From: Zootoca vivipara
Lineage: Eukaryota
NCBI RefSeq assembly: GCF_963506605.1
Contig: NC_083278.1
Coordinates: 36,952,001-37,016,000, forward strand
Length of the DNA: 64,000 nt
Direction: 5' to 3'
The notes beneath the pieces are model-generated. The model was given only the letters and a program-made list of their open reading frames with translations. It made no database searches and was not told the DNA's origin. Both the position numbers and the translations under genes were made by a program. The stretch's first letter is position 1; each line of letters starts with the position of its first letter. Shown piece after piece: positions 1,292 through 63,708 of this stretch.

Positions 1292-34740
<33,449 letters not shown>

Positions 34741-39582: not shown

Positions 39583-42351
39583 GAAATACAAAACATTCTC
39601 TCATCCAGCAAAGATATTTGGTAATTAATATTTGAAAATGATAAATTATGGTCAAGAACAATTGTTTCATTATTAAAACTGACATGTAAAAATGGTTTCT
39701 ATTGTTTTTCTTATAGAAATTGGTATGAATAAACATATACAAAAAAAAATAGCTCTGAAATGAAAATATATTGAATACAATGAGGACTCTTAACTTACAC
39801 AACCTCCAGTAGTGCCTGGTGTATAGTGGGATATCTTCAGATATATGCCCTAAAGATGTCATCTAGGCTGTGAAATGGTACCTTGGAGTCCATGTAAGCT
39901 TCCTCGCTGACATTAAGATGAGATCTTCTCCATGTATACATAAATAATGTTACGCTTGACTGTAAACTCAACATTTTTTTTACCTTGAGGCGGCTGACTA
40001 CCTCTAACGCGGCATCTACAAGCCCATATGAGAATATAACTTGGCAGGCGACTTTCTTGACACCGTAAAATAAATAGATGAAGATTAGTTAGCTCAACTC
40101 TTACAGGTATTGGCTCTGAGTAAACATTTAAGAGAAGCAATTAGCCATGGTATTGTTTATATAAGCTGTATTGCCTAAATGCACGCAGGAAGGAGAGATG
40201 GTTCAGGGCACTAGGATTATACCCAGAGCAGAAATGCACTTGATAATTAAAGGAAAACACCTGCCGCTCCAAAAAAAAGAAAGGAAGCAATGCTAGCACT
40301 AGTAAAAGACTTCCCCTTAGTGCTCGGTTCCTAAGCACACCTAACTTTAAATAATTCTGGCTTTGGATATTCTGTACACCTGGGGGGGGGGGGTGAAGAA
40401 GGACCTCTAAGCTGTGCTGTCCTTGCTGCTTTAGAATATTTGAAATTGAGGCTCGTGCATATTCCCGGCTGGCTGTAGGATTATGCACATGCACCAACCT
40501 ATCTAACAAGTCTCTCTACCCCCTACTTGCTGCAGACACCTGAAACACTTTGTTTTTACTGGAAGCAATTCGGATCACTACCAGTTATGCAGTGCTTAGC
40601 ATGCATTGAAGGTTCTGCACAACCTATTATTCCATTTAGACAAATGACCCAGCACAGAAGTGTGGGTTGTAGTGTGTGTGTGTGTGTGTGTGTGTGTCCA
40701 TTTAAAAAAAACTTACTAGATGTGCCTGCATGTTGCTAGTTGATAAGTCTTGTACAGTAACTAATCACACCACATTAGTGGCTTGGTGTCTGTTCTGTGC
40801 GAACAAAAACAATTACTGCAATCTATCACAACCATATGATAGCAAACACATCGCTTCTTATACACACAGCCTAAAATTTACAGGCCGATTCTCAAAAGGA
40901 TATAGGGAAATCTCTTAGCAATTATAGTTAAAATAAAAATGCCCACTTAATGTTTTTAATATCTGTAAAAGAACAGCATTGTGGGGTTTAGTTTCTGTCT
41001 GTCTTATTGTAGGTCACTTTAGGTTGCGCTGAACAAGAGAAAGTGACTAACAAATTTAATAAAGACTTAAAATAATCACTGGTGGTGACGGTTAGGGCTG
41101 AAAACCCCATTGTAAGCTTTCAATACGATTCTCCAGTAATTATAATAAAACAGTTACTACCGCATAATTGACAATCATTACAGTAATTAGTATATGTGTC
41201 GGCCACTTTTCTGTTCATTTATTTTGGGATAGAATTTCCAGCAGAGACTTCTGCATCTGAATCTAAGCTTTAAAATAACAAAAATATTTATCATATAAAC
41301 ACTGTACAGTAATTAAATACATTTAGCACTGCATTCGTGATAACATGGATATTATGTAATGGAGGACAACAGTTTTGACGGAAAGTAGATGCAGCCACCT
41401 TGTTTTTTACTCAAATATAAACTTCAGTTAATGTGTTCACTGTTAGGGAAAAAATGGGTTGCCTTCTGAAGCTCTGTTGTTGCCTCCCTCCTCCCCCAAA
41501 GACTCCATTTATCCGGGTGAGTGAACTTGGTATTACCAGCAGTCCTCTTGGTGAAAATCTGTGGAAACAAAGTGCCAATAATGTGGCCAACATTGACTCA
41601 AAAAACACTCAGAGCTTTCCCCCAAATTCCAGAGTTAATTTCTGGAGTGACACTTGCCCCACACCTTAGACTTCTCTTGAGATAAATTACTGGCCAAAAT
41701 TCATCAGAAAATAACTATTACATTTTCTGAGAATATTTTATTCTTTGGACTCCTCCTGAATTGCTGGATACTTCTATTCCCACCAAGAGTATTTGGCAAC
41801 CACTCCGCCCACTAACAGAGTTAAACACAGATCCAGTTTTAATACTGTTTAGAATTGCTGAAGGAAGCAATTCCATCTTTGCCTTACTCCAACTTACCAG
41901 TGCAAACAAAAATGTATGTATGTATTATACTAATCATTAACTGAATTGAAATTTCACGGTAGAAGTTTCTGTGAATGTTTGAGAAGTCCACTACCCCACT
42001 TGGACACAAGATCTGGGAAAGTGCTTCCCTTCTCCAATGCCCACACCATGCTGGACGGGACGGGATGACAGACATTTTGCTCACCCCTAGAATCCAGTTT
42101 ACAGAATCCAGATCCTCTCCTTCAGTAGTTTGTATCAGGCCTTTGTAGCGCTCAGTTTTTGTTTACTTTCGCACCACTCTTCAATGATTGTTTAGGCTAT
42201 TTTAAAAAGGGCTCAACTATAGCAGTGGCAAATAAATGCAACTGAAGTGTGTTTTGTTCTCTGACTCTCAAAGGCACATATATATTTAGGGGAGGTTTCC
42301 ACACAATAACACTATTATATAGAGCTATTTACAAAAATAAAAACCACAAAC

Positions 42352-42429
42352 CTTTATGCCCGCTGACTGTTGCCTAGAATTCAGGGCGTCAGATACTAAC
42401 TCAGCAGTCTTTGCTTTGTATCAGGTGGT
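42352..42429 (-). CDS. IMPG1: IMPG1 terminal coding exon; (R)[10 protein letters not shown] when joined directly to the EGF exon (stop 42398-42396)
   Basis: ccttcttttccttacag|A acceptor; the RxPD start resembles human RLPD (recalled); possible donor AAG|gtttgt at 42352. Confidence 0.72.
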
Positions 42430-45042
42430 CTGTAAGGAAAAGAAGGATATGAATGTTTACCGCATGCTGGTGTGTGCAAGCCATCAAAGCCAAAAGCTAG
42501 AGCAGAAAGTGCTAACAGTGCAGAAGTGCTAACAAGAATGTTCTGGTCTGAAGCTGTGACAGAGGTTTTAGAGACATTGAGGGTTAGTCCTTTTTAGTTG
42601 TGAAACACCAAAGGCAAGTTGAAGTTGGTTGTTAACAAGGGCAACTAAGAGAAGACCCATTTTGAAGAGGAACGAGTAGTATTTGCATGCATTTTACCTC
42701 CATTCTCTGTTCTGTGGTCATGCTTTTGCAGTTCTCGATCACTGCTCTCTGAAGGACTGATACAAGCACTTACATTACAGGGCCCATGACACAAACTACT
42801 GATGGGTTCATGGTGGTCAAAGGCAGGATTAATTCTGACAGCATTCTCTGTGTTGCTTTGGCTGAGAGGAGGACCTCTACAAGGCAGAACATGTTTGTTT
42901 AGGGTAAGACTTCCTGTCTGTAGTTTTTAAAAGTTCCAAAAAAAACTGTTGGGGGAGGGTTAAGCTGCTTACTCCAGTTTAGGCTTGGTATTGCATTTTC
43001 TTCGCAACTTATATATTAAAGTGATGAGAAGAATAACTAGGCTTAATAAGCCAAGCATCAAAGCTTTGGAGATGTTGGACCGGGTAGGTGCTGGAGCGTA
43101 TTTTGCACAACGCCCTTGGCTGTTTCTACGGGCTGGGCATCTAAAACATGGAGGGAAAGGGAAGCAAAGCAGTTTTATGTCAAAACAAGGGCATGCAGGA
43201 AAAACAATTCAAAACAGGTTCTCCATGCCTGTCCTAAACTCTTCAATCTGTGTTTCAATGCTGCATTTACTGTATATTTATCAGCCGGCACCCAAAGTGT
43301 AAGTAGACACAGTGAAACTTCCCTTTCCTATCTTTCTCCCAGCTCAGATATGCTCCAGGGGTCCCCACCATCACTTGGAGGCACACAGGGGCAAGAGAGT
43401 GAAGGGGAAGTCCTATAGCTCATGTGGATGTCAATTCCACAAGCGGGCTGATTCCACTGAATGCCAGTCATTTATAGGATAGCTCATTTGGGTAGAGCGT
43501 GGTGCTGATAATGCCAAAGTTGCAGGTTCGATGCCCCTAGAGGACAGCTGACTATTCCTCCATTGCAGGGAGTTGGACTAGATTATCCTCATGGTCCCTT
43601 CCAACTCTGTCATTCTATTCCATATTAACTTTTTAATTGTTTGATTTCTTCTTGTAAGACACCCTGAGGACTGCCATAGAGTGCGCTATAAATGCTGTAC
43701 ATAAATTATGGTAATAATACTGTAATAGAATTGCTAATAATAATAACATGGTGTAAGTGGCTGGCAGGCAAATATGTGTTCATTCAGGTTCATTTCCTAT
43801 ACAGAGACATCTCCCACCACAAGCACGGCGAAGCCTCAGATACTTACCTCATGAAGCTCCATATGCTCACTTGGAATGGTGGAAGGTCCTATAAGGAAAA
43901 GAGCTTGGAGCAGGTCTTCCTCACAAGAGGTGCCCGGGGGGCAAGGAAAGGCCAACCTCCCATTTTAGAATATAGAAGCGGGGGGTTGTATCCAAAGCAA
44001 CACAGCGGAGTTCTGCTGGGGCAACGACATTTCCTCTCCTCACTCGACCCACTCCCAAAATGTTCTCCAGAGCATCTCCCAAACCCTGGAGCTGATTTTG
44101 AGGGTGTGCAGGGGGGGGGGGGCTTCAGGGGAGAGGAGGGAAATGTTCCGTTCTGCTAGCGCGTGTCCCTTGCAATAGCAGAACAGGTGCATACCAGGTA
44201 TGCAGCACATGCATTCCTCTCTCCATAACAGGCATGGATATAGGGAGGTTCACATTCTTATTTTGTTTTTCTGGTATGCCTGGTGAGGCGACTGAAGGAC
44301 TTCCTGTCAGTATCTATCAAATATGCTACGAGGAAACTCCCAAGATTACCTCCTTCAATCTACAGATTCTTAAAATGAGCTAAATCTAAACAAAGCGTCT
44401 GATCCATTACACAGCTGACAAGTACATGTAATCTGACAAAAATAACATTTAACGTTGAAGCCCTTTCTGCTGGGCTGCATGAAGTAGATTCCAGCTTATG
44501 GCAAACAATAGAGGTGGGAAGTCAACGTGACCATGTGGAAACCCAAAACTTGATGCTGAGCACAGGCTCATAACAAAGCACTGGCCCATTTAGACCAGTA
44601 TTGTTACCATGACAACCAGGAGCTCTCCTGGGATCTTCCCAGTCCTGCTACCAGAGAGCTTTACAATTGGGAATTTTCTGTAGGGATGCCATAAACCACT
44701 GTTCCCTCCCTAGTCAATGTCTAACCAAGAATAATGGCTGCATTCTATCATGTGATGCTGTTTGCATGATGCAATAGATTCCATAATATATTTCAAATTC
44801 TACAGCAGCATTGATATTCATAATATTCATAATCACAATCGGTCCTGCCACCCTCACAGGCATACTTGGTAGGGATGTGGGGAGAGGGCCTTCTTAGTGA
44901 CTGGCCCCAAAACTTTGGAATTCTCTCCCTGGAGAAGCTAGACTGGCTCCTTCCTTGTCCGGAAGGACAAGAAGGAACAGACTTCTTTTAATGAAAGGGC
45001 TGGTGCCCTGCTGCTTTTATTGTAAGTATCGGTGTGTTTTTA

Positions 45043-45082
<40 letters not shown>

Positions 45083-48000
45083 TGTGTGTGTTTGATTGGT
45101 GTTTAATTGTTTTATAATTATTTTTAAAACAAATAATTTATATTAAAAATGTTTTTAGCTGTTCTTATTTTCTCTCTTTTAAGCCGCCTTGAGTCCCTGG
45201 CCAAGGGAAAGAGAGGGATAAAAATAAATACATATTAATATAATAGTGATGGCACTTACCTACACACTGCCCCTCTTCCTGGAACCAATTCACACTTGCC
45301 ACCATTAACACACAAGTGTGGCTCAATCTCACACAGGCTACGGCACGGCAGACCATCTCTTCGTACATAACCAGGCTTACAAAGGCAATCGGCCTCTTTC
45401 GTCCAGTCGTTCTTTACGCACTGTGAAAATTCGTCGCATCCCATGAACTTGCAAGGATCTGCTTGATCAGCTGTAAAAGAAAAGGATAATCTTTTTTTTA
45501 AAAAAATGGGTCCATTGCTGCAGTGCCACATATCACTTGGCAAAAACTTACTCTTCACTGAGGAGGGAAACAGGAGCTCTCCACAAATACGAGTCTATCA
45601 GTAAAATACATCTTAGAAAAAGAGCCAGCATCATTTTGCTTTTACAAACTGCAGTTATGGATTCTTTTCTTTGGTGATCTGGCTTTCTGTTTACTTGATT
45701 CTCCTGCCTGTGACAGTCATATGCTCAGACTAATAAAGGAGCTGCATATTACAAATAGTAGGAGCCCTGTATCTAGTGCTCCTCTCCATGTCTTAATATA
45801 ATTCATCCCACGTTCTAACCAGCTTGGCTTAGTATGCAAGGAATTGCCGGTGCTGGCATTGGTATAACCAAGAAGCTATGGCATGGCTGGCAGGTAAGGG
45901 CGTTCTGGGCAGGCTGTGACACAGAAGCCCACCTGAAAATGGCCCGAGTCCCACCAGCGGTTCCTAGTCTACTGTTTGAGAAACACTGGTCTAATGACAC
46001 CACTGGTATTTATTATAACATTTATTTTTAAATACTTTTTTAAAAATTTATTTTTAAATACTTTTAAAGTATTTTTAAATACTTTTAAAGTATTTTTAAA
46101 TACTTTAAGTGCTATAAGATTTCTTATCTGATCTTTTTGGAAATCCTCTTGAAGATCTCCCAACTCTTAGAACCACTAGCTAGGAACAACTGCGGGAGAG
46201 CGCTACTACTCTCATGCCCTGCTTGTAGGATTCCTGAAGGCAACTGTTTGAGTACTGTGGGAAGCAGGATCCTGGCCATTGGTCTGATCCAGCAGGGCTT
46301 TCATTTCTGGAAAGGAGTCCTCTTCCCTCTCCGAAATAGTCTGCTACCCACGCAAGCCTGTGACTCATAGCTGCGTGTGTCACTTGGCTCAGTTTCCTTG
46401 GCAGTCTTGCCTCATCTCCAAATATCTGAGAACCAGTATGTAGATCTTTTTCTCATTTTTCCACAACACTGAACTTTTAATTTTATATCTCCCAGGCTTT
46501 TTTTTTTTAAAAAAAGAGAGAGAATGTAACAGTGTTGAAAAAAATCCTTTAGGATATCCTAAGGAAACTGGTCCAAGTAATTGTGTGCCTTGCACCGAAT
46601 TTATTAGAATATCCGTTATTCTAGCAATCCCCAACTAGTCTTACAACACTGAAATAAAAGCCATCCTTTAATCTGGAGATTATATATTTCTGCAGAATCT
46701 TAGAGACAAAGTTGGTTCAGACATAATCCTATTTTTTCAAGTAATGAGTTTTCATCCTACCCTTAAACAAATAGGAAAGCAAGATATATTTGTTCTTCTA
46801 CATATAACCAATCAGGCATTTGTCGACTTCAGTTTTCATTCATAGTTCATTCATTCATCTATTCCAGGGTTTCCCAAAATTTTCAGCTGTTTTTTGGACT
46901 ACAACTCCCATCATCCCTAGCTAGCAGGAACAGTGGTCAGGGATCATAGCAGCCAACTCCTAGGCCTCCCCATAAAATATTTGAGGGACCCCCCAAGTTA
47001 TATAGGTGTTGCCATTCAAATGGTTTGTGAATCTTGTGATTATGTGGGGGGGGGGACTTACCTGGATCCCCCAATATTTTATTCCACTTGGGACCCCTGT
47101 CAGAGATGATGGGAGTTGTAGTCCATCAACAGCTGGAGACCCAAGTTTGGGAAACCCTAATCTAGTCCCATCCCTTGCTCAGTGCAGGAAATCCAGACCA
47201 AGAGCATTCCCCAAGAGATGGATCTCCAAAGAATCTCATGCGCTGCCACCCAGGTAAATGGTTCCACTGTTGAACTGTTCCTAGAGAGCAGCCCTGGTGG
47301 ATCAGAACAGTGACCCATCTAGTACTACCAGTATCCTGTTCTATTAGCTGCCTGTGGGAAGCCCACAAAAGGAAGCTGACCACAACCACACCTGACTGAT
47401 GATTTCAAACAACTGGTACTCAGAAGCATATTGCCTCCATCAGTGGAGGAACAACATAGCTATTAGGATTAGTAGTCACTGGAAGCCTTAGCCTCTATGA
47501 ATTTGTCTAATCCTTTTATAAAGTCATCCTGTTACTTAATCCCATTAGATCTAGACCTGCCCTCTCGGGCAGCAGACAAGATGTCTCTGCCCTCTTGTAG
47601 GTGACAGTCCTTCAGGTATCTGACTACAGCTATCATGTCCTCTGTGTCTTCCCTTCCCCAGGATAAAGAGACCTAGTTCCTTCACCCGTTCTTCATAGGA
47701 CTTCTTTGCAATACCCTTCACCACCGTTGTCCTCTGAACCAGCTCCAAATGTCTACAACCTTCTCAAACTGCAGTGCTGAAGAACCCCCAGAGGAGGCCT
47801 GGCTACTGCAGTGTCTCATCCCTTCAGACCTACATAAAAACAAATGATCAACTATGTTTGGTTTCGCTTACAGTGCTTTTTGCTGCATTTAATCTCACAT
47901 TTTAATCCACAAACTTTGTTCTAGTTAGGAAAGGGGCACAATTTAACACCCATCTTGTTTATCTCATTTAAATGCGCCATCAGCATTCCAGGATGTGGGG

Positions 48001-51000
48001 TAGAAGGAGGATCCTCCAGGACTGTTGTCAAGACAACATTTTAAAGTCATGAATGTTGGCAATGGCAGCAGAGTCATGATAATGCCATGTCAACATACTA
48101 CGGAAATTTTCTTCAGCGGAACCTGAAGTGCCTCACATCTGTGGGAGGATGAGGACAGAAGTTCACAAAGAGTTGTGAATGCATCTTTGCTTAAAATGGG
48201 GAGGGACTAAAAGCCAGAACGAGTACAGCCACAAGTACACAGTGACACACGCAACTTCAGATAAGTAGTTCACATTGCACAGTTGCTATGCCATCTTGAG
48301 ATATTTCTCCCAGTTCCTGTCTGTGATTGCATTAAGGTTCTCTCCGTTACTGTAGCCTGGCTGCCAGCCTCCTCACCCTTCCTTGGTCAGCAGACAGTTT
48401 TCTGTTGTTAAAAATGCACACTCAGCTTCCTACTCCACCCAAGCATATAACCTCAATTTAGCAATGTGCTTATCTCGCAGCAGGGTACCCAGTGCCCATT
48501 ATGCCATGTTCCTGAAGTGTGACTCTTCAAAGGAATGAGAACTCAGGACTGTAATGCCTGATGAACTCTTTCACCAGTTTTGTAGAATGGGTGGCCAAAT
48601 AAACAGATGCTCTTGAGTGCTGCAGCTGCCGTAGGAAGTGTGTGCAAATCAGCAGAATAACTCAATGACAGCAGCATGTTGATCAGAAAACCAAGTGAAC
48701 CTTGGGCTATGTTGGGACCATAGCTGCCAAGCACCCCGTTTTCCCTGGGAAACCCCCGTTTTTACTTACCTTTTCCCGGTGGTCCCCCGTATCACTTCGT
48801 CTCCCGTTTTTCTCCGTTATTTTCTCCTGCCGGCGGCCATTTTTTTCTTTCTGATTTGCCCATCTATGGGCACAAAAAATGGCCGCCGCCGGCTTCAAAA
48901 GTCGCATCTACACATGACCGTAAGTGCGTAGACGTCACTTCCGGTGTCGGCGGCGGCCATTTTGGGTGCCCATAGATGGGCGGGGCAACACCGGAAGTTG
49001 TGTTGATGCACTTCCGGTCATGCGTAGAAGCTGCTTTTGAAGCCGGCGGCAGCCATTTTTGGTGCCCATAGAAGGGCAAAGCGACACCGGAAGTTACGTC
49101 GACGCAACTTCCGGTGTCACGCAGCAGTCCGGGACTTGGAAGGTAACGTTGGGACATGTGAGATACATTCTGGGAGCACATTCTCCACAGTTTTCATTCT
49201 ACTCTTAGATCTGCTTGTGGGAAAGGTCAATTCATTAAAAGAGAGACTCAGTTCTCTGCCATGTTCTACATGATGTTTGGCCGGACATTGGCCAGGGCAC
49301 TGAACAGCTAGGAAATCTCCCCACAGCCTTACAGGAGCTGCTCCCAATGAAAAGCTGCAACAGACCTGCAGCTGCAGAAGGATTGTTTCAGTCATCAGGC
49401 TGGGCCCTCCCAGCCAGCAGCTTTAACTGGCAGAAGATCCTTGCTGCTGCTTCACTTGGCAGGATGGGCCTCTTACTCTTGAGTGATTATGTTGGTGCTC
49501 TCTGTAAGCGTGAAGTACATAGAACATTTGTCAGAACTCCCACTGACTTCATTTGGACTGTGGGCAAAATAATATCTTCCTCGATTTTGGCCTATGCATC
49601 CCCTTTTTCAATAAAAGTAAATATGCAGTAGAGTCAGATTCTCTCTAGTACCCTTTTGTCAATGCTAAGGAATGCTTAAGAGCTTTACATTTTGTTATAC
49701 AAATAAATAAGTGCAAACAACATGTGCCTTGTTTAGCTTAGAATGCATCTATAAATGGCAATGTTTCTTGTCAAAATACGCATTTCCCCAATTGCTATTT
49801 TCTGTTGATAAAAAACAGCTATTTAAGCTCTTGGGCTCTGTGCCATGTTTCACAGGATTCTCAGGAGGGACCCTGATCATGACTTAGAGACAACCTGGGG
49901 CTTTTCATTCTTCCCGTCTTACAGAAAGCAACCAACACCATGAAATGCTTGCAGGAGAGCAATGTTTCTTCCCCCACTGCCCCAGTTTTTTTTTACATCA
50001 CCTGGCTCAATATCAAGGGAATAGCTGTCAATTTCAAGGTTAAGGCGCTGAGCTGCTGCATCACAAAAATCCTCCAGCACACAATGGACAGCCTCTGTGA
50101 TGTTGTACGGCACTGACTTCGCAAACTTCATTTTGCTGTTGACAATCACACTTCCATTGCGGAAGTTCAGTATTTCCAGTTGCTTGAAGCCTGTTAGGTT
50201 GGACTGTAGGTAAGGAAGAAGCTACAAAAAGAAAAAAGAAAAAGAAATAAATGAGAAAACTTTAAGTTAGTGGTGTTCAAACTTTTTTCAAAGAGGGCCA
50301 GATTTTATGAAGTGAAGGGCCATGACCAAAGGGTCAACCAAAGTTGTTGAGCTTTTTTTAAGGTTGGAGTTGTTGAGGTTTTTTTATGGTTTTACCCCAG
50401 GAAATAAACTGCCACAGGGGCTGGATTAAACCGACTGGCGGGGAGGTTTAGTCCCCTGAAACAGACTTTGGACATGCCTGCTTTAAATCCTCTATCACTG
50501 CCCACGTATCATTGATTCCACTTATATTCACTTTTCATTTTGGGGAACATAAATCATCTGCTCTGTTTCACTGACTTTATTAGCAGACTTTACATCTGCT
50601 ACCAGGTTAAGTTTCTCAGTTAGTCTTTAACTGTCTCTCTGGTTAGATCTTCTTCAATAATCTATTAAGATAGATAGAGTGCTGTTTTCCTTCTAATTAA
50701 ATTTCATAGGCTGCAATCCAGTTAAAAAAGAAATCAATGGGACTTAAGCATGCTCAAATGTGAATTGCAGCCATGGGCAAGGCAGTTCTATGGTTTCAAG
50801 AGGGTTTTGCGTGTTGTTAGTTGTTAAATTGAAAAAATGAGCCTTGGATATTTATGTCCCAGCCGCCAAAGTCAACAACGGGTACTTGTGTATACTGGGA
50901 GCTCTGCATTGCATAGCCAATAACTTAGCATGTTTTGTATGTTCTTTCATGGCAAGGAGAGCTAACACCCTCCAGCTATGATTACTCACACTTCCAACCT

Positions 51001-54000: not shown

Positions 54001-57000
54001 ACACTGTGGACGGTGCCCGTGGGTACAGTTCTTTTCTGCCCCCCAGATAGCCATTGTGTCACTTTTAGACATTTCCCCCTAAACTATTATTTTAGTAATG
54101 ATAACTCTACATGATTACTTTCCTAATTTATCTTAGGTCACCAAATCTCCTTACAGACCGCCCCCTCCCAATAATGTTTTCTCCTAAATGTGCAAAGGCT
54201 TTGGTATTCTGTACAGAAATATAGAGTACTCAAGAGTCTGTAACCAAAAGAAATATGACAGGAAAGGGAATTAGGAGCACAGCATAAAGATAAAGGGATG
54301 ATGACAATTATTTCAAGAATAATTCACTTCAGTAGTATTGTGTCCTACAAGTTGCTATGCTGACATTTCTTGCTCAGAATCTTCATTTTTACGATTAAAT
54401 CTTCAGCAACTAATTGGTTTGACAAACTGTCGCACCTTTGATGCATGTGCAATTAGGTGCAAATTAGATGACAATGATTTGCCTTTGGTTTGAACATCAA
54501 AATGGTAAAGCTGGCTATCTCCTCGTGTGTAGTCAATACAAATTTGCTGAACACACTTATGCACATTCTTCAGTTATTCCACAAATTCACTGATTCAATA
54601 TTTCCTTAATAACTTGCCAATATACCTTGGTCAAAGGCTGAGTGGTTGCAAGACACATAAGTGGGTTACTGTTGACTTTTATTTAGGTAATTATCTTTTA
54701 ATGAAGTTTGTGTGTGACTGGGTGCAAATGAATGAATATGGTGGAATAACTTACATTTTGTTTGAACGCAGTGATTTAATTCCTTTTTGTGAATAGATTT
54801 AGGTCTGATCTGCAGTTTATTCCCCTCCACAATCCTAGTGAGTGTGGCAAAACAGATAACTCAAGTCTCTGCCATCATTTCTCCTATGCTACTGACTTGT
54901 TCTGCTATTGCAGTGCTGCTGGCAAGGAAAAAATGTCTTTGAAGTTACATTACACTCACCCACCCTATATAATCACTGTTTAGAGACCCCTTACCAGGAG
55001 TGATTCCTACAACGGCAACAGGTGAGGACAAACATCAGTGTTGCATGGACACTGGCTCCAGGGAGCCTGTTTCTCAGATATTTCTCATTGTCACCTACTG
55101 ACTTAGAAGCAGGGAGCTTCAGTGCTCAAGTTGGTGGGGGAGAATTATTACCCAAACTGTGGCATCATCCCCCTACAAAAAAGCAGATAGGCTTACTACT
55201 ACTTAGGAAAACTGAAACTTTTTTAGCTTATACATTCTAAAAAGCTGTACTTCATAAACTTAATATTCTCACCACCACCACCAAGTACCTAGAACCTTGA
55301 GTAAATTTACTGATCTGAACCGCAAACAGGTTGGGCAACAGGTGAGGTTGAGAAGACCTAACAGCATACAGAGGCTATAAACCTTGTCCCTAAATACACA
55401 TTCCTAAGATCATCTATCAAAATAGCTTCCAAGGGTTTGGTGGCCTTACATGAAAGNNNNNNNNNNNNNNNNNNNNNNNNNNNNNNNNNNNNNNNNNNNN
55501 NNNNNNNNNNNNNNNNNNNNNNNNNNNNNNNNNNNNNNNNNNNNNNNNNNNNNNNNNNNNNNNNNNNNNNNNNNNNNNNNNNNNNNNNNNNNNNNNNNNN
55601 NNNNNNNNATGCAGGGGGTTGAACTAGACGATCCTCATGGTCCCCTTCCAACTGCACAATTCTATGTTTCTATGTCAAACTATATTGAAGGTAGAAAATA
55701 GATTTATATACTCACTAACAGAAAAAAATGTTATAAGCAAAGCTTCTCTAAAACAGAACCAATTAACAACTCATGGGAACAGATTAAAATTATGAAATGG
55801 ACAGCTACGGTGAAGGATACCAAAAAATTACAAAAATGACTTACAGAAACGGATCCCTGTGATTCAATGCAGGCAACTCTCCATTTGTATGGGGTTGCGT
55901 CAGCACATAAGCCCATTCTGCCCCCACCCCATTCTGCCGATTCCACCCCTTTCCAGGGACAAAAATGATGTGTGTCTCAGTAGCTGCATGTCAGTTGGGT
56001 ACGTGCAAAATGGTTGTTGCCTGTATATGGGAGAGAAGTTAGGTTTTACAGGAATAGAAGTAGTTTACTATACAAGGTAGTAATATTTATGTGTTAAGTT
56101 TTCATATGAATCTATTTTATAAACAGTTGATAATAAAACATCTAACATGCACACAAGATAGATTAAAACTACGTCTTCATTATTAATACTTTCTCTGGTA
56201 TTGTGAAGAAATTCATTTCATGAAAAAAAAATGCAATCATTACAGTATGCTTATTATTTGCCACTGTATTTTCTGGGAAGGCACTATTTATTTCTGCTTA
56301 CTGTACTTTAACTATTTTGGGCAGCTTAGAGAATTAGTGTTTCCTAATGAAAGGATTATAAAGTGAGAGCCATGCTACTGAATTCTATAAGAGTACCAAA
56401 ACAGCGTGAGTCTAATTAGATGGCTAATATGACAGGAGGGGAATTGCAGGTCAGAGGAGGCCTATGAAAGAATCCTTTATCCGTAACTCAATTTCCTGTT
56501 TTGCTTTTATATTTTGTTGCCTCTCAAGTGCTGTTTTTTTTTTAAAAAAAGAATATGTAAGGACTACCAAAACATTATAGAAAGCAACACGCAGTTTAAG
56601 AACAAAAAGGCGTATGCACAATCCAACAGTGTTAAATCTGGGTTAAGTCCACTCAGTGCTTTTTTTTTTTCTTCTGGTGGTGTATTTTTCTGCCCCAAAT
56701 CAGAGCCTCACATCTCCTTCCCAAAGCTGGGTAACTTTCTGCCCTAGCTTAGGGACAGAGACATGATGCTCTGGCAGGGTCCGATAGCCCTCCCTTGCAT
56801 GGTGAGTTTTTCTAGAAAAAAAGCACTGAGTCCACTAATTTAAACAATTTCTCAGGGCAGAATATTATTCATTTGATTAGAATCTATAGGTAAATTTTCA
56901 GGTAAAAGCTGTTTACATTGGAATCCTGTACCCAAAAGAACATTTCAAGACAGAAAATGAAATAAGCAGCAAGTAGGTATGTATACTGAAGAACTGAGGA

Positions 57001-61800: not shown

Positions 61801-63708
61801 AAGTTTCTTACCTTGCCCTCGTAAACCTTATTCTGAAAGGGACAATGATAATCTTGACTCCTAACAAACTGCCAGATGTATGCCAAGAAAGACTGCCTCA
61901 CATTCAGCATCTTAACACTTCCTTGCTACCATGAACTGGCCGCTCTGCTCTGAGATGCTGAGAATTTATAGGATCCCAGTGACACATGTGCATTTTTCAT
62001 GCACCTCATGATGATTCCAGCAAACCTGGAGCCCCATTAAACTTGATAGTGACAGCAATGTGAAGAAGAAAATGGAACTGCTTTGCAGATTGCAGCTGAG
62101 ACTTTGGAAATCCTACAGTACATTCCGGCAAAGGCTAGACCCAGGGTGCCAGAGTACCCTGGAAGGCTACAGAATGCAGACCACCAAAGAGATGATTTGC
62201 AGAACAAAAGAATGCTAACTTGTGCAAACCACACTGAGGTATTTCATTTCCAATGTTATATTTTGGGACAATTAACATGCCTATGCATGCAATTGCAGAG
62301 AACAAGGAACACCAAGATCATGAAAATAACACACTGAAAAGAGGCAGGTCCCACATCACCTGGTAGCCTGGCTGGGCAGCTGCTGGTTCCCCACTGTCCC
62401 AACCTCCCTTCCCCAGCTGCGATGCTGCTTCTATTTCTATGTTACATCTGAATCACGCCTCGATTATGAAAGTGATAGATCAATGCCTGGAAGTAGCGCG
62501 GTAGATGGGATGAGAGCTAATAAGCTCCAGCTAAATGCCAATAAGATGGAGGCCCCGAGTCTGGCAAGCAACTTATAATGCTGCACTATCCCTGAAGGAG
62601 CAGGTGTGCAGTTTGGGGGTGCAGAATGCCCAGGTGGTGGGAATGGCACCTTTTACCATCTTTAATTGGTGTTGCAGGTATGACTGCTCTTGGGTCATGC
62701 TAACCATGCCACACTGACTTGGTAACATCAGGACTGCGCTACTGTAATGCGTTCTACAAGGGGCAACCTTTAAGATTGGTACGGAAGCTGCAGCTAATGC
62801 AGAATACAGTGCTTGGGCTGCTGACTAAGGAAGCTTAATGCAAACATTTAACACCGCTTTTTAAAGAACCGCATTGGCTGGCAATATGCTACTGCCATTC
62901 CAAGTTTAAGGCTTTTGTACTTACCTAAAGCCGTAAACTGCTTCTGACTGGGTTATCTGAATGGTTTGCCCTGTATAGATCTGCCTGGAGGGGGGGGGGG
63001 TAGGCCCATTCATGCTCCACTAAACTACAGTGCAGTGTGACATCAACATGTGGCTGCTTTCAGCCTCAGCTATCCCACTCACTTCACCTGCAGTATAGGG
63101 ATGATAATTCTTGCTCACCCTACCAGAGTGTTATAAGACGAACTAAGATAATGTATGTGAGTATATACTTGACATGCAGTATATACATGCTAAACATTAT
63201 TATAAGCACAGTTCATTAAAGATGACTAGAAGGGATTACAAAAAGTTACCTTTTTGTAACAGTAAATGCACATTTTTACATACATAGTATATTGCCATTA
63301 TCTGCTTACTGTCAACACATGGTACGGACACAGGATCTCCTGTACTGGAAAGGTACTAAATAGCTTACCTTGCTCAGAGAGGATTGTTGAGTCTGTGCTG
63401 GGGATCTGGTCTTTCATCTTCTCATCTTCCCTCTCCTCGTCGCTAACCTCCTGAAAGATACCAGCAGTAAATGTTGCAGGTGTGAATAACTGTTCAGTTG
63501 GCATCTCAGAAAAGGCTGGGCTTAAATCATTGCTGGCTGATTGATCTGCTGGAGGAGGTGAATCAGGATCTCCTGGTCTGAGAGGAACCCCAGTACTATC
63601 CAAGGCATTGAAAGGCACTGTGGGCATTGGGTAATCTAGAATGAGGTTTGTATCCTCAATGTCATTAACTGTTGCTGGACTTGCATAAACCAGTAGTACT
63701 TCAGAGGT
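42396..63708 (-). CDS. IMPG1: Interphotoreceptor matrix proteoglycan 1 (SPACR), 3' part (5' exons lie beyond the window)
   Basis: Mucin-like region, SEA-2 ([14 protein letters not shown]...[22 protein letters not shown]) and EGF (DQADPCKF). Convergent adjacency to MYO6 is the established IMPG1 synteny, not that of IMPG2. Confidence 0.96.
42698..42876 (-). CDS. IMPG1: Putative IMPG1 cytoplasmic-tail exon: (E)[59 protein letters not shown]
   Basis: ttctgccttgtag|A, in phase with the TM exon across a 96-bp intron; donors at 42774 (AAT|gtaagt) or 42698 (GAG|gtaaaa); ungapped similarity to the IMPG2 tail (recalled). Confidence 0.8.
42973..43140 (-). CDS. IMPG1: Putative IMPG1 transmembrane exon (168 bp): (R)[55 protein letters not shown](E)
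   Basis: ccctttccctccatgttttag|A ... GA|gtaagc; phase 2-2, stop-free. Supplies Cys5/Cys6 of EGF-2, then an 18-aa hydrophobic run followed by KLRRK. Confidence 0.85.
43477..43620 (+). mobile_element. SINE with tRNA-Ile-like head and CR1-like 3' tail
   Basis: TAGCTCA..GGTAGAGCGTGGTGCTGATAATGCCAAAGTTGCAGGTTCGAT head; TTGGACTAGAT..GGTCCCTTCCAACTC tail; the same tail occurs at 55609-55670. Confidence 0.8.
43848..43888 (-). CDS. IMPG1: Putative IMPG1 41-nt stop cassette exon (R)TFHHSK*
   Basis: ctcttttccttatag|G ... GAG|gtaagt are near-consensus sites; no homology support. Confidence 0.4.
44860..45245 (+). mobile_element. Degenerate L2-type 3' end containing (TG)n at about 45047-45090
   Basis: agggccttct..gtg..gcccc..ctttggaattctctcc motif and taagccgccttgagtccc tail; approximate. 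Confidence 0.55.
45260..45470 (-). CDS. IMPG1: IMPG1 exon (211 bp): EGF-1 and first four cysteines of EGF-2, [11 protein letters not shown]...[10 protein letters not shown]
   Basis: tttacag|CT ... AG|gtaagt; phase 1-2. Confidence 0.97.
46865..47158. mobile_element. hAT MITE carrying a nested second element (46945-47099)
   Basis: Outer TIR CAGGGTTTCCCAAA / TTTGGGAAACCCT; inner element flanked by TCAGGGAT / TCAGAGAT. Confidence 0.85.
47550..47810 (-). mobile_element. CR1 LINE ORF2 C-terminal fragment
   Basis: ELVQR...VKG...[12 protein letters not shown], a typical CR1 motif (ORF 47551..47748). Confidence 0.8.
48719..49147. mobile_element. CpG-rich non-autonomous hAT-like element with internal inverted repeats
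   Basis: 8-bp TSD GTTGGGAC (48711-48718, 49148-49155); left TIR CATAGCTGCCAAG; right TIR degenerate. Confidence 0.85.
50002..50221 (-). CDS. IMPG1: IMPG1 exon (220 bp): SEA-2 C-half [27 protein letters not shown]...SYSLDIEP
   Basis: tttgtag|CTT ... CAG|gtgatg; phase 0-1. Confidence 0.97.
50268..50480. mobile_element. hAT (Charlie-like) MITE
   Basis: Ends TAGTGGTGTTCAAA / TTTGGACATGCCTG; TSD CTTTAAGT / CTTTAAAT. Confidence 0.75.
51655..52190 (-). CDS. IMPG1: IMPG1 exon (536 bp): mucin region and SEA-2 N-half
   Basis: tttctag|AT ... CTG|gtaggt; within ORF 51499..52242. Confidence 0.96.
52596..52814. mobile_element. Tc1/mariner (Tigger-like) MITE
   Basis: CAGTGGTACCTC ... GAGGTACCACTG|TA. 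Confidence 0.9.
52825..53018. mobile_element. Non-autonomous DNA element, inverted relative of the nested 46945-47099 insert
   Basis: Shares CCATTTGAATGGCAAC, CCTCAAATATTTTAT and the terminus TTGGCTCCTATG; left boundary approximate. Confidence 0.7.
53131..53925 (-). mobile_element. L2-clade LINE, 5'-truncated, ORF2 C-terminus largely open
   Basis: [34 protein letters not shown] and [12 protein letters not shown] motifs (ORF 53207..54004) plus simple-repeat tail. Confidence 0.93.
55457..55608. other. Assembly gap (152 N)
   Basis: Run of N; the right flank starts inside a SINE tail. Confidence 1.
56654..56828. mobile_element. hAT MITE (CAGTGCTTT family)
   Basis: TIR CAGTGCTTTTTTT / AAAAAAAGCACTG; 8-bp TSD AGTCCACT. 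Confidence 0.9.
58844..58880. repeat. (CA)n microsatellite
   Basis: Seen directly. Confidence 0.98.
60692..60980 (+). mobile_element. BovB (RTE) LINE 3' end
   Basis: [41 protein letters not shown] and tail GTCCATGGGGTCACGAAGAGTCGGACACGACT. Confidence 0.95.
62470..62985 (+). mobile_element. Degenerate L2-clade LINE fragment
   Basis: [10 protein letters not shown], ..[18 protein letters not shown] remnants with frameshifts. Confidence 0.8.
63369..63708 (-). CDS. IMPG1: IMPG1 mucin-like exon (340 bp): [33 protein letters not shown]...DSTILSEQ
   Basis: tttgctag|ACC ... AAG|gtaagc; S/T/P/acidic-rich, open frame, phase 0-1 fits the next exon. Confidence 0.88.

What the first reader, a model, noticed from the sequence alone, without database searches (positions are those of the whole stretch)
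42973..43140. Hidden transmembrane exon: a membrane-anchored form of the 'secreted' IMPG1
Seen: a 168-bp phase 2-2 exon on the minus strand with a good pyrimidine tract/AG and GA|gtaagc, too short for the ORF track. Spliced to the EGF exon (which ends ...GAVC-AG) it reads [57 protein letters not shown]. It adds the missing CxC...C pair of EGF-2, then an 18-residue hydrophobic helix and a positive-inside KLRRK. Established: mammalian IMPG1 is secreted and lacks a TM domain, while its paralog IMPG2 has this EGF-TM exon layout (CRCRVGENWWYRGKHCEEF...TM, recalled). Inference: this lizard IMPG1 keeps the ancestral type-I membrane architecture, giving a possible second membrane tether for the interphotoreceptor matrix. 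I cannot tell whether automated annotations already predict this isoform.
Basis: partly seen in the sequence, partly recalled or inferred. Interest (0 to 1): 0.92.

Follow-up and report, generated by a model that had tools for sequence, protein, structure and literature searches.

The report
Annotated transmembrane exon of lizard IMPG1
The 168-base exon is real, is spliced into RNA, and gives this lizard's IMPG1 eye-matrix protein a membrane anchor that mammalian IMPG1 lacks, but public annotation of this species and of many reptiles and birds already contains it.

Summary
Observation confirmed. Window 43140..42973 (minus strand) is a 168-nt phase 2-2 exon with an AG acceptor and a GA|gtaagc donor. 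It encodes the last two cysteines of EGF-2, a short stalk, an 18-residue hydrophobic helix and KLRRK.

The locus is IMPG1. It lies tail-to-tail with MYO6, whose Myosin-VI cargo-binding domain is on the plus strand at 32.2-34.7 kb.

The exon is not hidden:
- The NCBI models XP_034965452.1 and .2, "interphotoreceptor matrix proteoglycan 1 [Zootoca vivipara]", hold the window's EGF, TM and tail exon peptides exactly.
- About 35 protein clusters, mostly RefSeq IMPG1 models of lizards, geckos, turtles and birds, carry the same EGF-TM-tail layout.

Spliced contigs from three public runs (three organisms, three studies) show both predicted junctions, 45260>43140 and 42973>42876. One of them also shows the TM-skipping junction, from the EGF exon to the last coding exon read in another frame. 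That is the secreted-type ending annotated in many birds and turtles.

Best reading: sauropsid IMPG1 is made as an IMPG2-like type-I membrane proteoglycan, with splice variants that lack the anchor.

I found no paper that discusses this; papers on human and mouse say only IMPG2 has a TM domain. The reading is sound, the novelty is low and the interest is modest.

The parts
50002..50221 (-). SEA-2 exon (LLPYLQSN...SLDIEP + G). It holds the GSxxV-type autoproteolysis motif GSVIV at 50155..50141.
   Evidence: Translation. Pfam SEA on the neighbouring exon and on the whole RefSeq protein at residues 500-595, E 2e-30. The motif's role in IMPG1/IMPG2 is from PMC9478142.
45260..45470 (-). EGF exon (phase 1 to 2). 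It encodes EGF-1 and the first four cysteines of EGF-2, and ends GAVC + AG.
   Evidence: It is 100% identical to residues 607-677 of XP_034965452.2 by tblastn. Five of five substitutions against two related lizards are synonymous.
42973..43140 (-). The finding: the 168-nt phase 2-2 TM exon. EGF-2 C5-C6 ([12 protein letters not shown]) lies at 43140..43107, the stalk [14 protein letters not shown] at 43106..43065, the hydrophobic helix [18 protein letters not shown] at 43064..43011, and the stop-transfer KLRRK at 43010..42996.
   Evidence: Exact match in the NCBI Zootoca IMPG1 proteins. Joints 43140^45260 and 42876^42973 in contigs of three runs, with 0 mismatches in 168 nt in run X1. Kyte-Doolittle 2.46 and the chance control. 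AlphaFold2 helix 699-726.
42698..42876 (-). Cytoplasmic-tail exon, 179 nt (phase 2 to 1): (E)[59 protein letters not shown]. The NPAF motif is at 42830..42819. An internal alternative donor AAT|gtaagt lies at 42774|42773.
   Evidence: Conservation of NAVRINPAF(D/E)H(D/H)EP and CSVSAC across 19 sauropsids. Joint 42428^42775 in run X3.
42645..42697 (-). Read-through of the last coding intron. It gives the alternative C-terminus [17 protein letters not shown], with the stop at 42647..42645.
   Evidence: It is the ending of XP_034965452.2. Contig 1 of run X1 is unbroken over 42348-42876. Similar GK(M/T/V)H endings stand in models of Phrynosoma, Hemicordylus, Paroedura, Phaethornis and Lagopus.
42352..42429 (-). 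Last coding exon, read in two frames. After the tail exon it reads (G+AC) DHLIQSKDC, with the stop at 42403..42401. After the EGF exon directly it reads (AG+A) [11 protein letters not shown], with the stop at 42398..42396; this is the anchor-less, secreted-type ending. The 3' boundary is not verified.
   Evidence: XP_034965452.1 ends DHLIQSKDC. Bird and turtle short models end R-SPDQFTKPRLTS. Joint 42428^45259 in run X2. Contigs of all three runs stop matching at 42348, beside AAG|GTTTGT.
32206..34740 (+). Last exons of MYO6 (cargo-binding domain), convergent with the IMPG1 gene. They mark the locus as IMPG1.
   Evidence: Pfam Myosin-VI_CBD, E 5e-23 and 1e-13. ORFs. That MYO6 and IMPG1 are neighbours in human is established knowledge and was not tested here.

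Best explanation
The stretch is a genuine and already annotated coding exon of the common lizard's IMPG1 gene.

Spliced between the EGF exon and a tail exon, it does three things:
- It finishes the second EGF-like domain by supplying cysteines 5 and 6.
- It adds a 14-residue stalk.
- It adds one membrane-spanning helix with a positive-inside KLRRK.

The roughly 75-90 residues that follow would then be cytoplasmic. They include a conserved NPAF motif.

The resulting protein has the order signal peptide (seen in orthologues), SEA-1, mucin region, SEA-2, EGF, EGF, TM, tail. That is the domain order described for its paralogue IMPG2.

Inferred mechanism: as shown for mouse IMPG2, the SEA-2 motif (GSVIV here) self-cleaves. 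The large glycosylated ectodomain can then be shed into the interphotoreceptor matrix while a small EGF-TM-tail stub stays in the photoreceptor membrane.

Alternative splicing gives other endings:
- Skipping the TM and tail exons (347 nt) shifts the frame of the last coding exon and gives an anchor-less, secreted-type protein with an incomplete EGF-2.
- An internal donor in the tail exon, or retention of the last intron, changes only the tail.

Shown: the exon, its splicing, its conservation, its annotation and the helix prediction. Inferred: membrane insertion, topology, SEA cleavage, shedding, and which isoform dominates in photoreceptors.
For: Sequence and frame.

Identity of the gene:
- The Myosin-VI cargo-binding domain is on the opposite strand just downstream.
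- SEA domains are found.
- The window's EGF, TM and tail exon peptides are found exactly in XP_034965452.1 and .2, IMPG1 [Zootoca vivipara].

Annotation elsewhere:
- phmmer of the 55-residue exon peptide against 1.84 billion representatives gave 3 hits. The best is Phrynosoma IMPG1, whose cluster also holds Sceloporus XP_042302838.1.
- 31 IMPG1 proteins of lizards, geckos, turtles and birds, nearly all covering 93-100% of the EGF-TM-tail query (one 75%).
- Their alignment keeps RCPxRR..C, the hydrophobic core, (K/A)(L/I)RRK and NAVRINPAF(D/E)H(D/H)EP.

Expression:
- Joints 43140^45260 and 42876^42973, with CT..AC on the plus strand (GT..AG on the gene strand), appear in Logan contigs of runs X1, X2 and X3. 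These are three organisms and three studies.
- The X1 contig (2829 nt) is 99-100% identical to the window.

Membrane helix:
- Kyte-Doolittle mean 2.46.
- Only 1 of 48,068 six-frame windows combines that hydrophobicity with a following K/R cluster.
- AlphaFold2 predicts a single helix at 699-726, pLDDT up to 81, with a disordered tail.

Constraint: lizard to bird or turtle identity is 54-56% for the TM exon, against 43-50% for the mucin region and 83-95% for SEA-2 and EGF.

Other:
- GSVIV is present, and its role in IMPG cleavage is described in PMC9478142.
- Short models ending R-SPDQFTKPRLTS match the other frame of the last coding exon and the joint 42428^45259 in X2.
Against: - The three runs are labelled only 'RNA? 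(a guess)' and their tissues are unknown. That they are RNA is inferred from the clean GT..AG intron removal.
- Contigs show presence, not abundance.
- The X1 contig retains the last coding intron, so it may partly reflect unfinished transcripts.
- Raw RNA reads of the same species (X21) gave no cover of any IMPG1 exon, probably because the tissue does not express the gene.
- There is no protein-level evidence of membrane insertion, cleavage or localisation.
- The AlphaFold2 model is poor overall (mean pLDDT 42).
- Pfam EGF hits across the junction are below the cut-off (hEGF 13.9 against 29.3 bits).
- Substitution counts against close relatives are tiny: TM 1 synonymous and 1 I>V. The distal tail shows 4 non-synonymous changes.
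- Many bird, turtle, crocodilian and galliform models lack the TM exon, so the anchored form may not be universal or dominant.
Confidence: 0.88

Rival explanations
1. The exon is real and spliced, but the membrane-anchored form is a minor or tissue-restricted isoform. On this view the main retinal product in lizards, as in mammals, is the secreted form made by joining the EGF exon straight to the last coding exon.
For: - Run X2 carries the skipping joint 42428^45259 at contig depth 11.8, against 6-7.9 for the TM joints.
- Most bird and turtle models are short forms ending R-SPDQFTKPRLTS.
- The same frame is open in the window.
Against: - In X1 (the window's species) and in X3, only TM-including joints were assembled between the EGF exon and downstream exons.
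- Both RefSeq versions for this species choose the TM form.
- Many short bird models are homology-based 'partial' entries, so their lack of the exon says little.
- The short form leaves EGF-2 with four of its six cysteines.
Confidence: 0.25
2. The exon is a decaying relic of an ancestral IMPG2-like anchor. On this view it is open by chance in this genome and has no function.
For: - Mammalian IMPG1 is described without a TM domain.
- Galliform and gharial models skip the exon.
Against: - The frame is open and the features are conserved in about 35 clusters spanning squamates, turtles and birds.
- The predicted junctions are used in three organisms.
- The hydrophobic core, the basic cluster and the two cysteines are kept over that whole span.
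Confidence: 0.02
3. The locus is IMPG2 or another paralogue, so a TM exon is simply expected.
For: The EGF-EGF-TM-tail domain order equals that reported for IMPG2.
Against: - It is convergent with the MYO6 cargo-binding-domain exons, the known IMPG1 neighbourhood.
- It matches exactly the proteins NCBI names IMPG1 in this species.
- The protein is about 800-870 aa long, not about 1240.
- It shares its last coding exon with the IMPG1-type short ending.
Confidence: 0.02
4. The hydrophobic stretch is translated but does not act as a stable membrane anchor, for instance because it is removed or serves as a retention or degradation signal.
For: There is no experimental evidence of membrane insertion, and the structure model is weak overall.
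Against: - An 18-19-residue segment with a Kyte-Doolittle mean of 2.46, flanked by KLRRK and followed by a 75-90-residue hydrophilic tail, is the classical stop-transfer arrangement.
- It is not C-terminal, so it is not a GPI signal.
- The tail carries conserved motifs, which makes sense only if the tail persists.
Confidence: 0.05

Closest known systems
IMPG2 (SPACRCAN), the paralogue
   Same: - The domain order is the same: SEA, mucin, SEA-2, two EGF-like repeats, one TM helix and a cytoplasmic tail. The human coordinates are quoted in PMC10558372.
- IMPG2 has a SEA-2 GSxxV self-cleavage that releases an ectodomain and leaves a membrane stub (PMC9478142; bioRxiv 10.1101/2025.07.29.667331). 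The lizard IMPG1 has GSVIV.
   Different: - It is a different gene: next to MYO6, about 800-870 aa against 1241, and named IMPG1 by NCBI.
Mammalian IMPG1 (SPACR)
   Same: It is the orthologous gene by name and neighbourhood. It has the same SEA, mucin, SEA-2 and EGF parts and is made by photoreceptors, according to the literature.
   Different: - It is described as secreted, with one EGF-like domain and no TM.
- The lizard, turtle and bird models add C5-C6 of EGF-2, a TM helix and a tail.
- Whether mammals keep relics of the exon was not testable here.
Short IMPG1 models of birds and turtles (for example Coturnix, Dromaius, Pelodiscus)
   Same: They come from the same gene. They end GAVCR-SPDQFTKPRLTS, which is the other frame of the same last coding exon. 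The window's equivalent is [11 protein letters not shown].
   Different: They lack the TM and tail exons. They appear to be the secreted splice form. That the cloned chick SPACR is of this kind is my recollection and was not checked.
SEA-(EGF)-TM mucins such as MUC1 and MUC3
   Same: They are type-I membrane mucins with a self-cleaving SEA module next to the membrane and a shed ectodomain. MUC1 is the reference for the GSxxV motif in PMC9478142. The ESM Atlas's nearest cluster for the EGF-TM-tail part was 'mucin-3A'.
   Different: The Atlas score was only 0.84, which is chance level by the tool's own controls. No sequence homology was shown beyond the shared domain types.

Membership tests
IMPG1 orthologue (as opposed to IMPG2) | Genomic neighbourhood: tail-to-tail with MYO6 | tested here: met
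   Pfam Myosin-VI_CBD on the plus strand at 32206-34737, E 5e-23 and 1e-13. The IMPG1 exons are on the minus strand from 42352 upward. That MYO6 and IMPG1 are neighbours in human is established knowledge.
IMPG1 orthologue (as opposed to IMPG2) | Sequence identity to proteins named IMPG1 | tested here: met
   The window's EGF, TM and tail exon peptides are exact substrings of XP_034965452.1 and .2. tblastn is 100% over the EGF exon.
IMPG1 orthologue (as opposed to IMPG2) | Placement in the IMPG1 clade of a tree that includes IMPG2 | not tested
   No IMPG2 sequence could be obtained.
Type-I single-pass membrane protein | One hydrophobic segment of about 18-25 residues | tested here: met
   [18 protein letters not shown]. 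The Kyte-Doolittle 19-residue mean is 2.46. AlphaFold2 predicts a helix at 699-726. The hydrophobic core is kept in all 31 orthologues.
Type-I single-pass membrane protein | Positive-inside flank on the C-terminal side | tested here: met
   KLRRK directly follows the helix. The form (K/A)(L/I)RRK is conserved, with R723 invariant and K721, R724 and K725 at 90% or more.
Type-I single-pass membrane protein | N-terminal signal peptide | tested here: inconclusive
   The first exons lie outside the window, and the Zootoca models start at MAKHRTKR. Orthologues start MHLK(S/T)GLIFLII..LALQVQG, which looks like a signal peptide. No predictor was run.
Type-I single-pass membrane protein | Experimental membrane integration and topology | not testable with these tools
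   This needs expression, carbonate extraction, surface biotinylation or protease protection.
EGF-like domain (completeness of EGF-2) | Six cysteines with EGF spacing | tested here: met
   C-x6-C-x5-C-x9-C-x-C-x9-C, read across the junction (and the protein). C676, C678 and C688 are invariant in 31 sequences.
EGF-like domain (completeness of EGF-2) | Match to a curated EGF profile above its cut-off | tested here: not met
   Pfam hEGF at residues 660-680 scores 13.9 bits against a cut-off of 29.3. Short EGF profiles often fail on single divergent repeats, so the domain is claimed from the cysteine pattern only.
Self-cleaving SEA module | GSxxV motif in SEA-2 | tested here: met
   GSVIV at 50155..50141. 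G556, S557, I559 and V560 are invariant and V558 is nearly invariant. The motif definition is from PMC9478142.
Self-cleaving SEA module | Actual cleavage | not testable with these tools
   This needs a western blot of the expressed protein and a motif mutant.

The most novel reading that the evidence does not exclude
In sauropsids, and perhaps in the vertebrate ancestor, IMPG1 is primarily a membrane-anchored, SEA-cleaved proteoglycan like IMPG2. Regulated splicing would switch it between anchored and free forms, through inclusion of the TM exon and a last coding exon read in two frames. Mammals would have lost the anchor, and that loss would be why mammalian IMPG1 depends on IMPG2 for its placement in the interphotoreceptor matrix. 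No paper in the searchable library discusses this.
Probability: 0.5. Interest if true: 0.45.

Novelty: already known. Interest (0 to 1): 0.3.

Why it matters
- The field's working model comes from human and mouse. In it, IMPG1 is a free, secreted matrix component whose localisation depends on membrane-bound IMPG2.
- The sequence data, already sitting in RefSeq, show that reptiles and birds encode an IMPG1 with its own membrane anchor and cytoplasmic tail, plus splice forms without it. Many of these animals have cone-rich retinas.
- This bears on how far chick or reptile retinas can stand in for human IMPG1 disease.
- It bears on how the matrix is tethered in cone-dominant eyes.
- It bears on when the anchor was lost on the way to mammals.
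- It is an under-discussed point of comparative biology rather than a discovery. The exon itself is ordinary annotated coding sequence.

Tried and rejected
1. Third homologue search, with the TM and tail part of P0046 (UniParc UPI00022405B0, 1078 aa, taxon unknown, TM present). It found only itself. No named amphibian, fish or mammal protein with this exon was obtained. This is no evidence of absence, because the search needs shared 5-residue words.
2. Quick tree. P0046 sits on a very long branch as sister of the squamates (SH-aLRT 92). The tool warns that its place is unsure, so I drew no conclusion about the age of the exon from it.
3. ESM Atlas on residues 676-801. The best scores were 0.80-0.84 (mucin-3A, pro-neuregulin-4 and EGF proteins), which is chance level by the tool's own controls. 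I used it only as a lead.
The loci of other species could not be fetched, so there is no dN/dS and no check of whether galliforms and crocodilians have lost the exon.
5. Pfam on the exon peptide alone gave only sub-threshold hits (Hol_Tox, Syndecan) that reflect the hydrophobic helix. I rejected these as family assignments.
6. Raw RNA reads of the window's species (X21) covered no IMPG1 exon. This is uninformative because the tissue is unknown.
7. Paper searches for a TM form of IMPG1 in chick, fish or lizard found none.
Each exon was searched by reference, and full-length work used the database proteins P0019, P0128 and their orthologues.
9. Relic exon, IMPG2 mis-assignment and GPI signal were considered and rejected (see the rivals).
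Full report
**1. Observation**

On the minus strand, 43140..42973 is a 168-nt exon.
- A long pyrimidine tract and AG precede it, and GA|gtaagc follows it.
- Read in frame by reference (window:42975-43139:-), it gives [55 protein letters not shown] with no stop.
- The upstream exon (45470..45260) ends GAVC + AG|gtaagt.
- The downstream exon starts at 42876 behind a tag acceptor.
- Across the junction the cysteines read C-x6-C-x5-C-x9-C-x-C-x9-C, a complete six-cysteine EGF pattern. The exon supplies cysteines 5 and 6.
- The best 19-residue Kyte-Doolittle mean is 2.46.
- Of 48,068 stop-free 19-residue windows in the six frames of the window, 87 are as hydrophobic. Only this one is followed by four or more K/R.

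**2. Which gene**

- Upstream exons on the same strand carry SEA-domain sequence.
- They also carry the SEA-2 motif GSVIV.
- On the plus strand at 32.2-34.7 kb lie the last exons of MYO6 (Pfam Myosin-VI_CBD, E 5e-23 and 1e-13; ORFs). The two genes therefore converge, which is the known IMPG1 neighbourhood.
- phmmer of the 55-residue exon peptide against 1.84 billion representatives gave three hits. The best is a Phrynosoma protein that UniRef names IMPG1. Its cluster also holds Sceloporus undulatus XP_042302838.1, an 864-aa IMPG1 that reads ...GAVCRCPVRRNRGERC...TM...KLRWK...NPAFDHDEP....

**3. Already annotated**

- A search with the EGF-TM-tail part of the Sceloporus protein returned 31 IMPG1 proteins of lizards, geckos, turtles and birds, nearly all covering 93-100% of it (one 75%).
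- One of them is NCBI's IMPG1 of Zootoca vivipara (XP_034965452.1, 801 aa). It contains the window's EGF, TM and tail exon peptides as exact substrings and ends DHLIQSKDC.
- The current version, XP_034965452.2 (809 aa), also has the window's alanine in MKFAKSV. It ends [17 protein letters not shown], the read-through of the last coding intron.
- The window is therefore Zootoca vivipara, or something indistinguishable from it. The 'hidden' exon is part of this species' RefSeq model.
Each exon was used by reference, and full-length analyses used database proteins.

**4. Conservation**

In 19 aligned C-termini and 31 full-length proteins, the following are kept from lacertids to birds:
- R-C-P-x-R-R...C;
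- the hydrophobic core;
- (K/A)(L/I)RRK;
- NAVRINPAF(D/E)H(D/H)EP;
- CSVSAC.

Identity of Zootoca to turtles and birds, by region:

| Region | Identity |
|---|---|
| TM exon | 54-56% |
| Mucin region | 43-50% |
| EGF exon | 83-84% |
| SEA-2 | 95% |

Against two related lizards, the substitutions seen in read contigs are as follows:

| Exon | Synonymous | Non-synonymous |
|---|---|---|
| EGF | 5 | 0 |
| TM | 1 | 1 (I>V) |
| Tail | 2 (proximal part) | 4 (distal part) |

These numbers are too small for a dN/dS.

**5. Expression**

One run search and one read lay-out were allowed.
- Logan contigs of three runs (X1, X2, X3) carry the joints 43140^45260 and 42876^42973. The skipped ends are CT..AC on the plus strand, which is GT..AG on the gene strand.
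- The three runs come from three organisms and three studies.
- X1 matches the window at 99-100% (0 mismatches in the TM exon). It is a 2829-nt contig joining the EGF, TM and tail exons, with the last coding intron retained.
- The runs are labelled RNA only as a guess and their tissues are coded. Clean intron removal in three species argues for cDNA.
- X2 also shows 42428^45259, the EGF exon joined to the last coding exon.
- X3 shows 42428^42775, which uses an internal donor AAT|gtaagt in the tail exon.
- Raw RNA reads of the same species (X21) did not cover the gene at all.

**6. Isoform logic**

- The TM exon is 168 nt, so skipping it alone keeps the frame. Models of Lagopus and Gavialis do this.
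- The TM and tail exons together are 347 nt. Skipping both shifts the frame of the last coding exon.
- After the tail exon, the last coding exon reads DHLIQSKDC-stop. After the EGF exon it reads [11 protein letters not shown]-stop.
- Most bird and turtle models found with a turtle query are of this short kind and end R-SPDQFTKPRLTS.
- The short form has only four of the six cysteines of EGF-2. This fits the anchored form being the complete architecture and the short one a splice derivative.

**7. Mechanism**

- AlphaFold2 on the 31-sequence alignment is poor overall (mean pLDDT 42), as expected for a mucin. It gives one long helix at 699-726 over the hydrophobic segment (pLDDT up to 81) and a disordered tail.
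- With an orthologue-type signal peptide, the protein would be type I.
- By analogy with mouse IMPG2, SEA-2 self-cleaves at GSxxV, the ectodomain is shed and a membrane stub remains (PMC9478142; bioRxiv 10.1101/2025.07.29.667331).
- On that analogy the lizard IMPG1, which has GSVIV, would be delivered as a membrane protein, cleaved, and release its glycosylated ectodomain into the matrix.
- These steps are inferred, not shown.

**8. Known or new**

- Searches for a TM form of IMPG1 in chick, fish or lizards found nothing.
- The exon is thus known to annotation pipelines but apparently not discussed.
- How old it is remains open. One TM-bearing protein of unknown taxon (P0046) is 55% identical to the Zootoca protein, but its place in a quick tree is unsure. 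No IMPG2, amphibian, fish or mammal sequence could be compared.

**9. Verdict**

- The claims of a hidden exon and of high novelty do not hold.
- It is a sound, ordinary, already annotated exon with a modest comparative-biology angle.

I tested the second directly.

Noticed in passing
window 42352-42429 (-): The last coding exon is read in two frames that both look conserved. DHLIQSKDC / GHQ..QNQD follows the tail exon, and [10 protein letters not shown] / SPDQFTKPRLTS follows the EGF exon. This is a short dual-coding stretch tied to the anchored-versus-secreted choice.
   Followed up: partly
window 42348-42352 (-): Contigs of all three runs stop matching the window at exactly 42348, beside AAG|GTTTGT, and run on for up to about 1.9 kb of sequence not found in 41900-42347. 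The 'terminal' exon is probably followed by one more intron and a 3'UTR exon further downstream. The read-through ending (stop at 42645) would then lie about 300 nt before a junction.
   Followed up: no
P0044 (Lagopus muta), P0115 (Coturnix japonica), P0043 (Gavialis gangeticus): Galliform and gharial IMPG1 models lack the TM exon. Lagopus and Gavialis join the EGF exon in frame to a tail exon, and the Lagopus tail looks degraded (NAARMNSAFEHDEA against [14 protein letters not shown]). This may be lineage loss of the anchor. It might explain why chick SPACR counts as secreted.
   Followed up: no
window 42877-42972 (-): The 96-nt intron between the TM and tail exons is retained in low-depth contigs of X2 and X3. 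Retention gives GAG TAA at once, which would be a TM protein with a tail of only about 13 residues (...[13 protein letters not shown]-stop). Gene calls on Logan contigs (P0002, P0003) end the same way.
   Followed up: partly
window 63370-63627 (-): The exon here is used in a short form in the Zootoca RefSeq model, starting at [11 protein letters not shown]. The longer open frame upstream (..[25 protein letters not shown]..) matches the longer isoforms of other lizards, so there is an alternative acceptor in the mucin region.
   Followed up: no
window 43388-43635: There is a very high contig and read depth (hundreds to thousands) in all four runs, with many variant letters. This is an interspersed repeat inside the intron between the EGF and TM exons.
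   Followed up: no
window 55437-55600: A run of N (an assembly gap or masked stretch) lies inside an IMPG1 intron.
   Followed up: no
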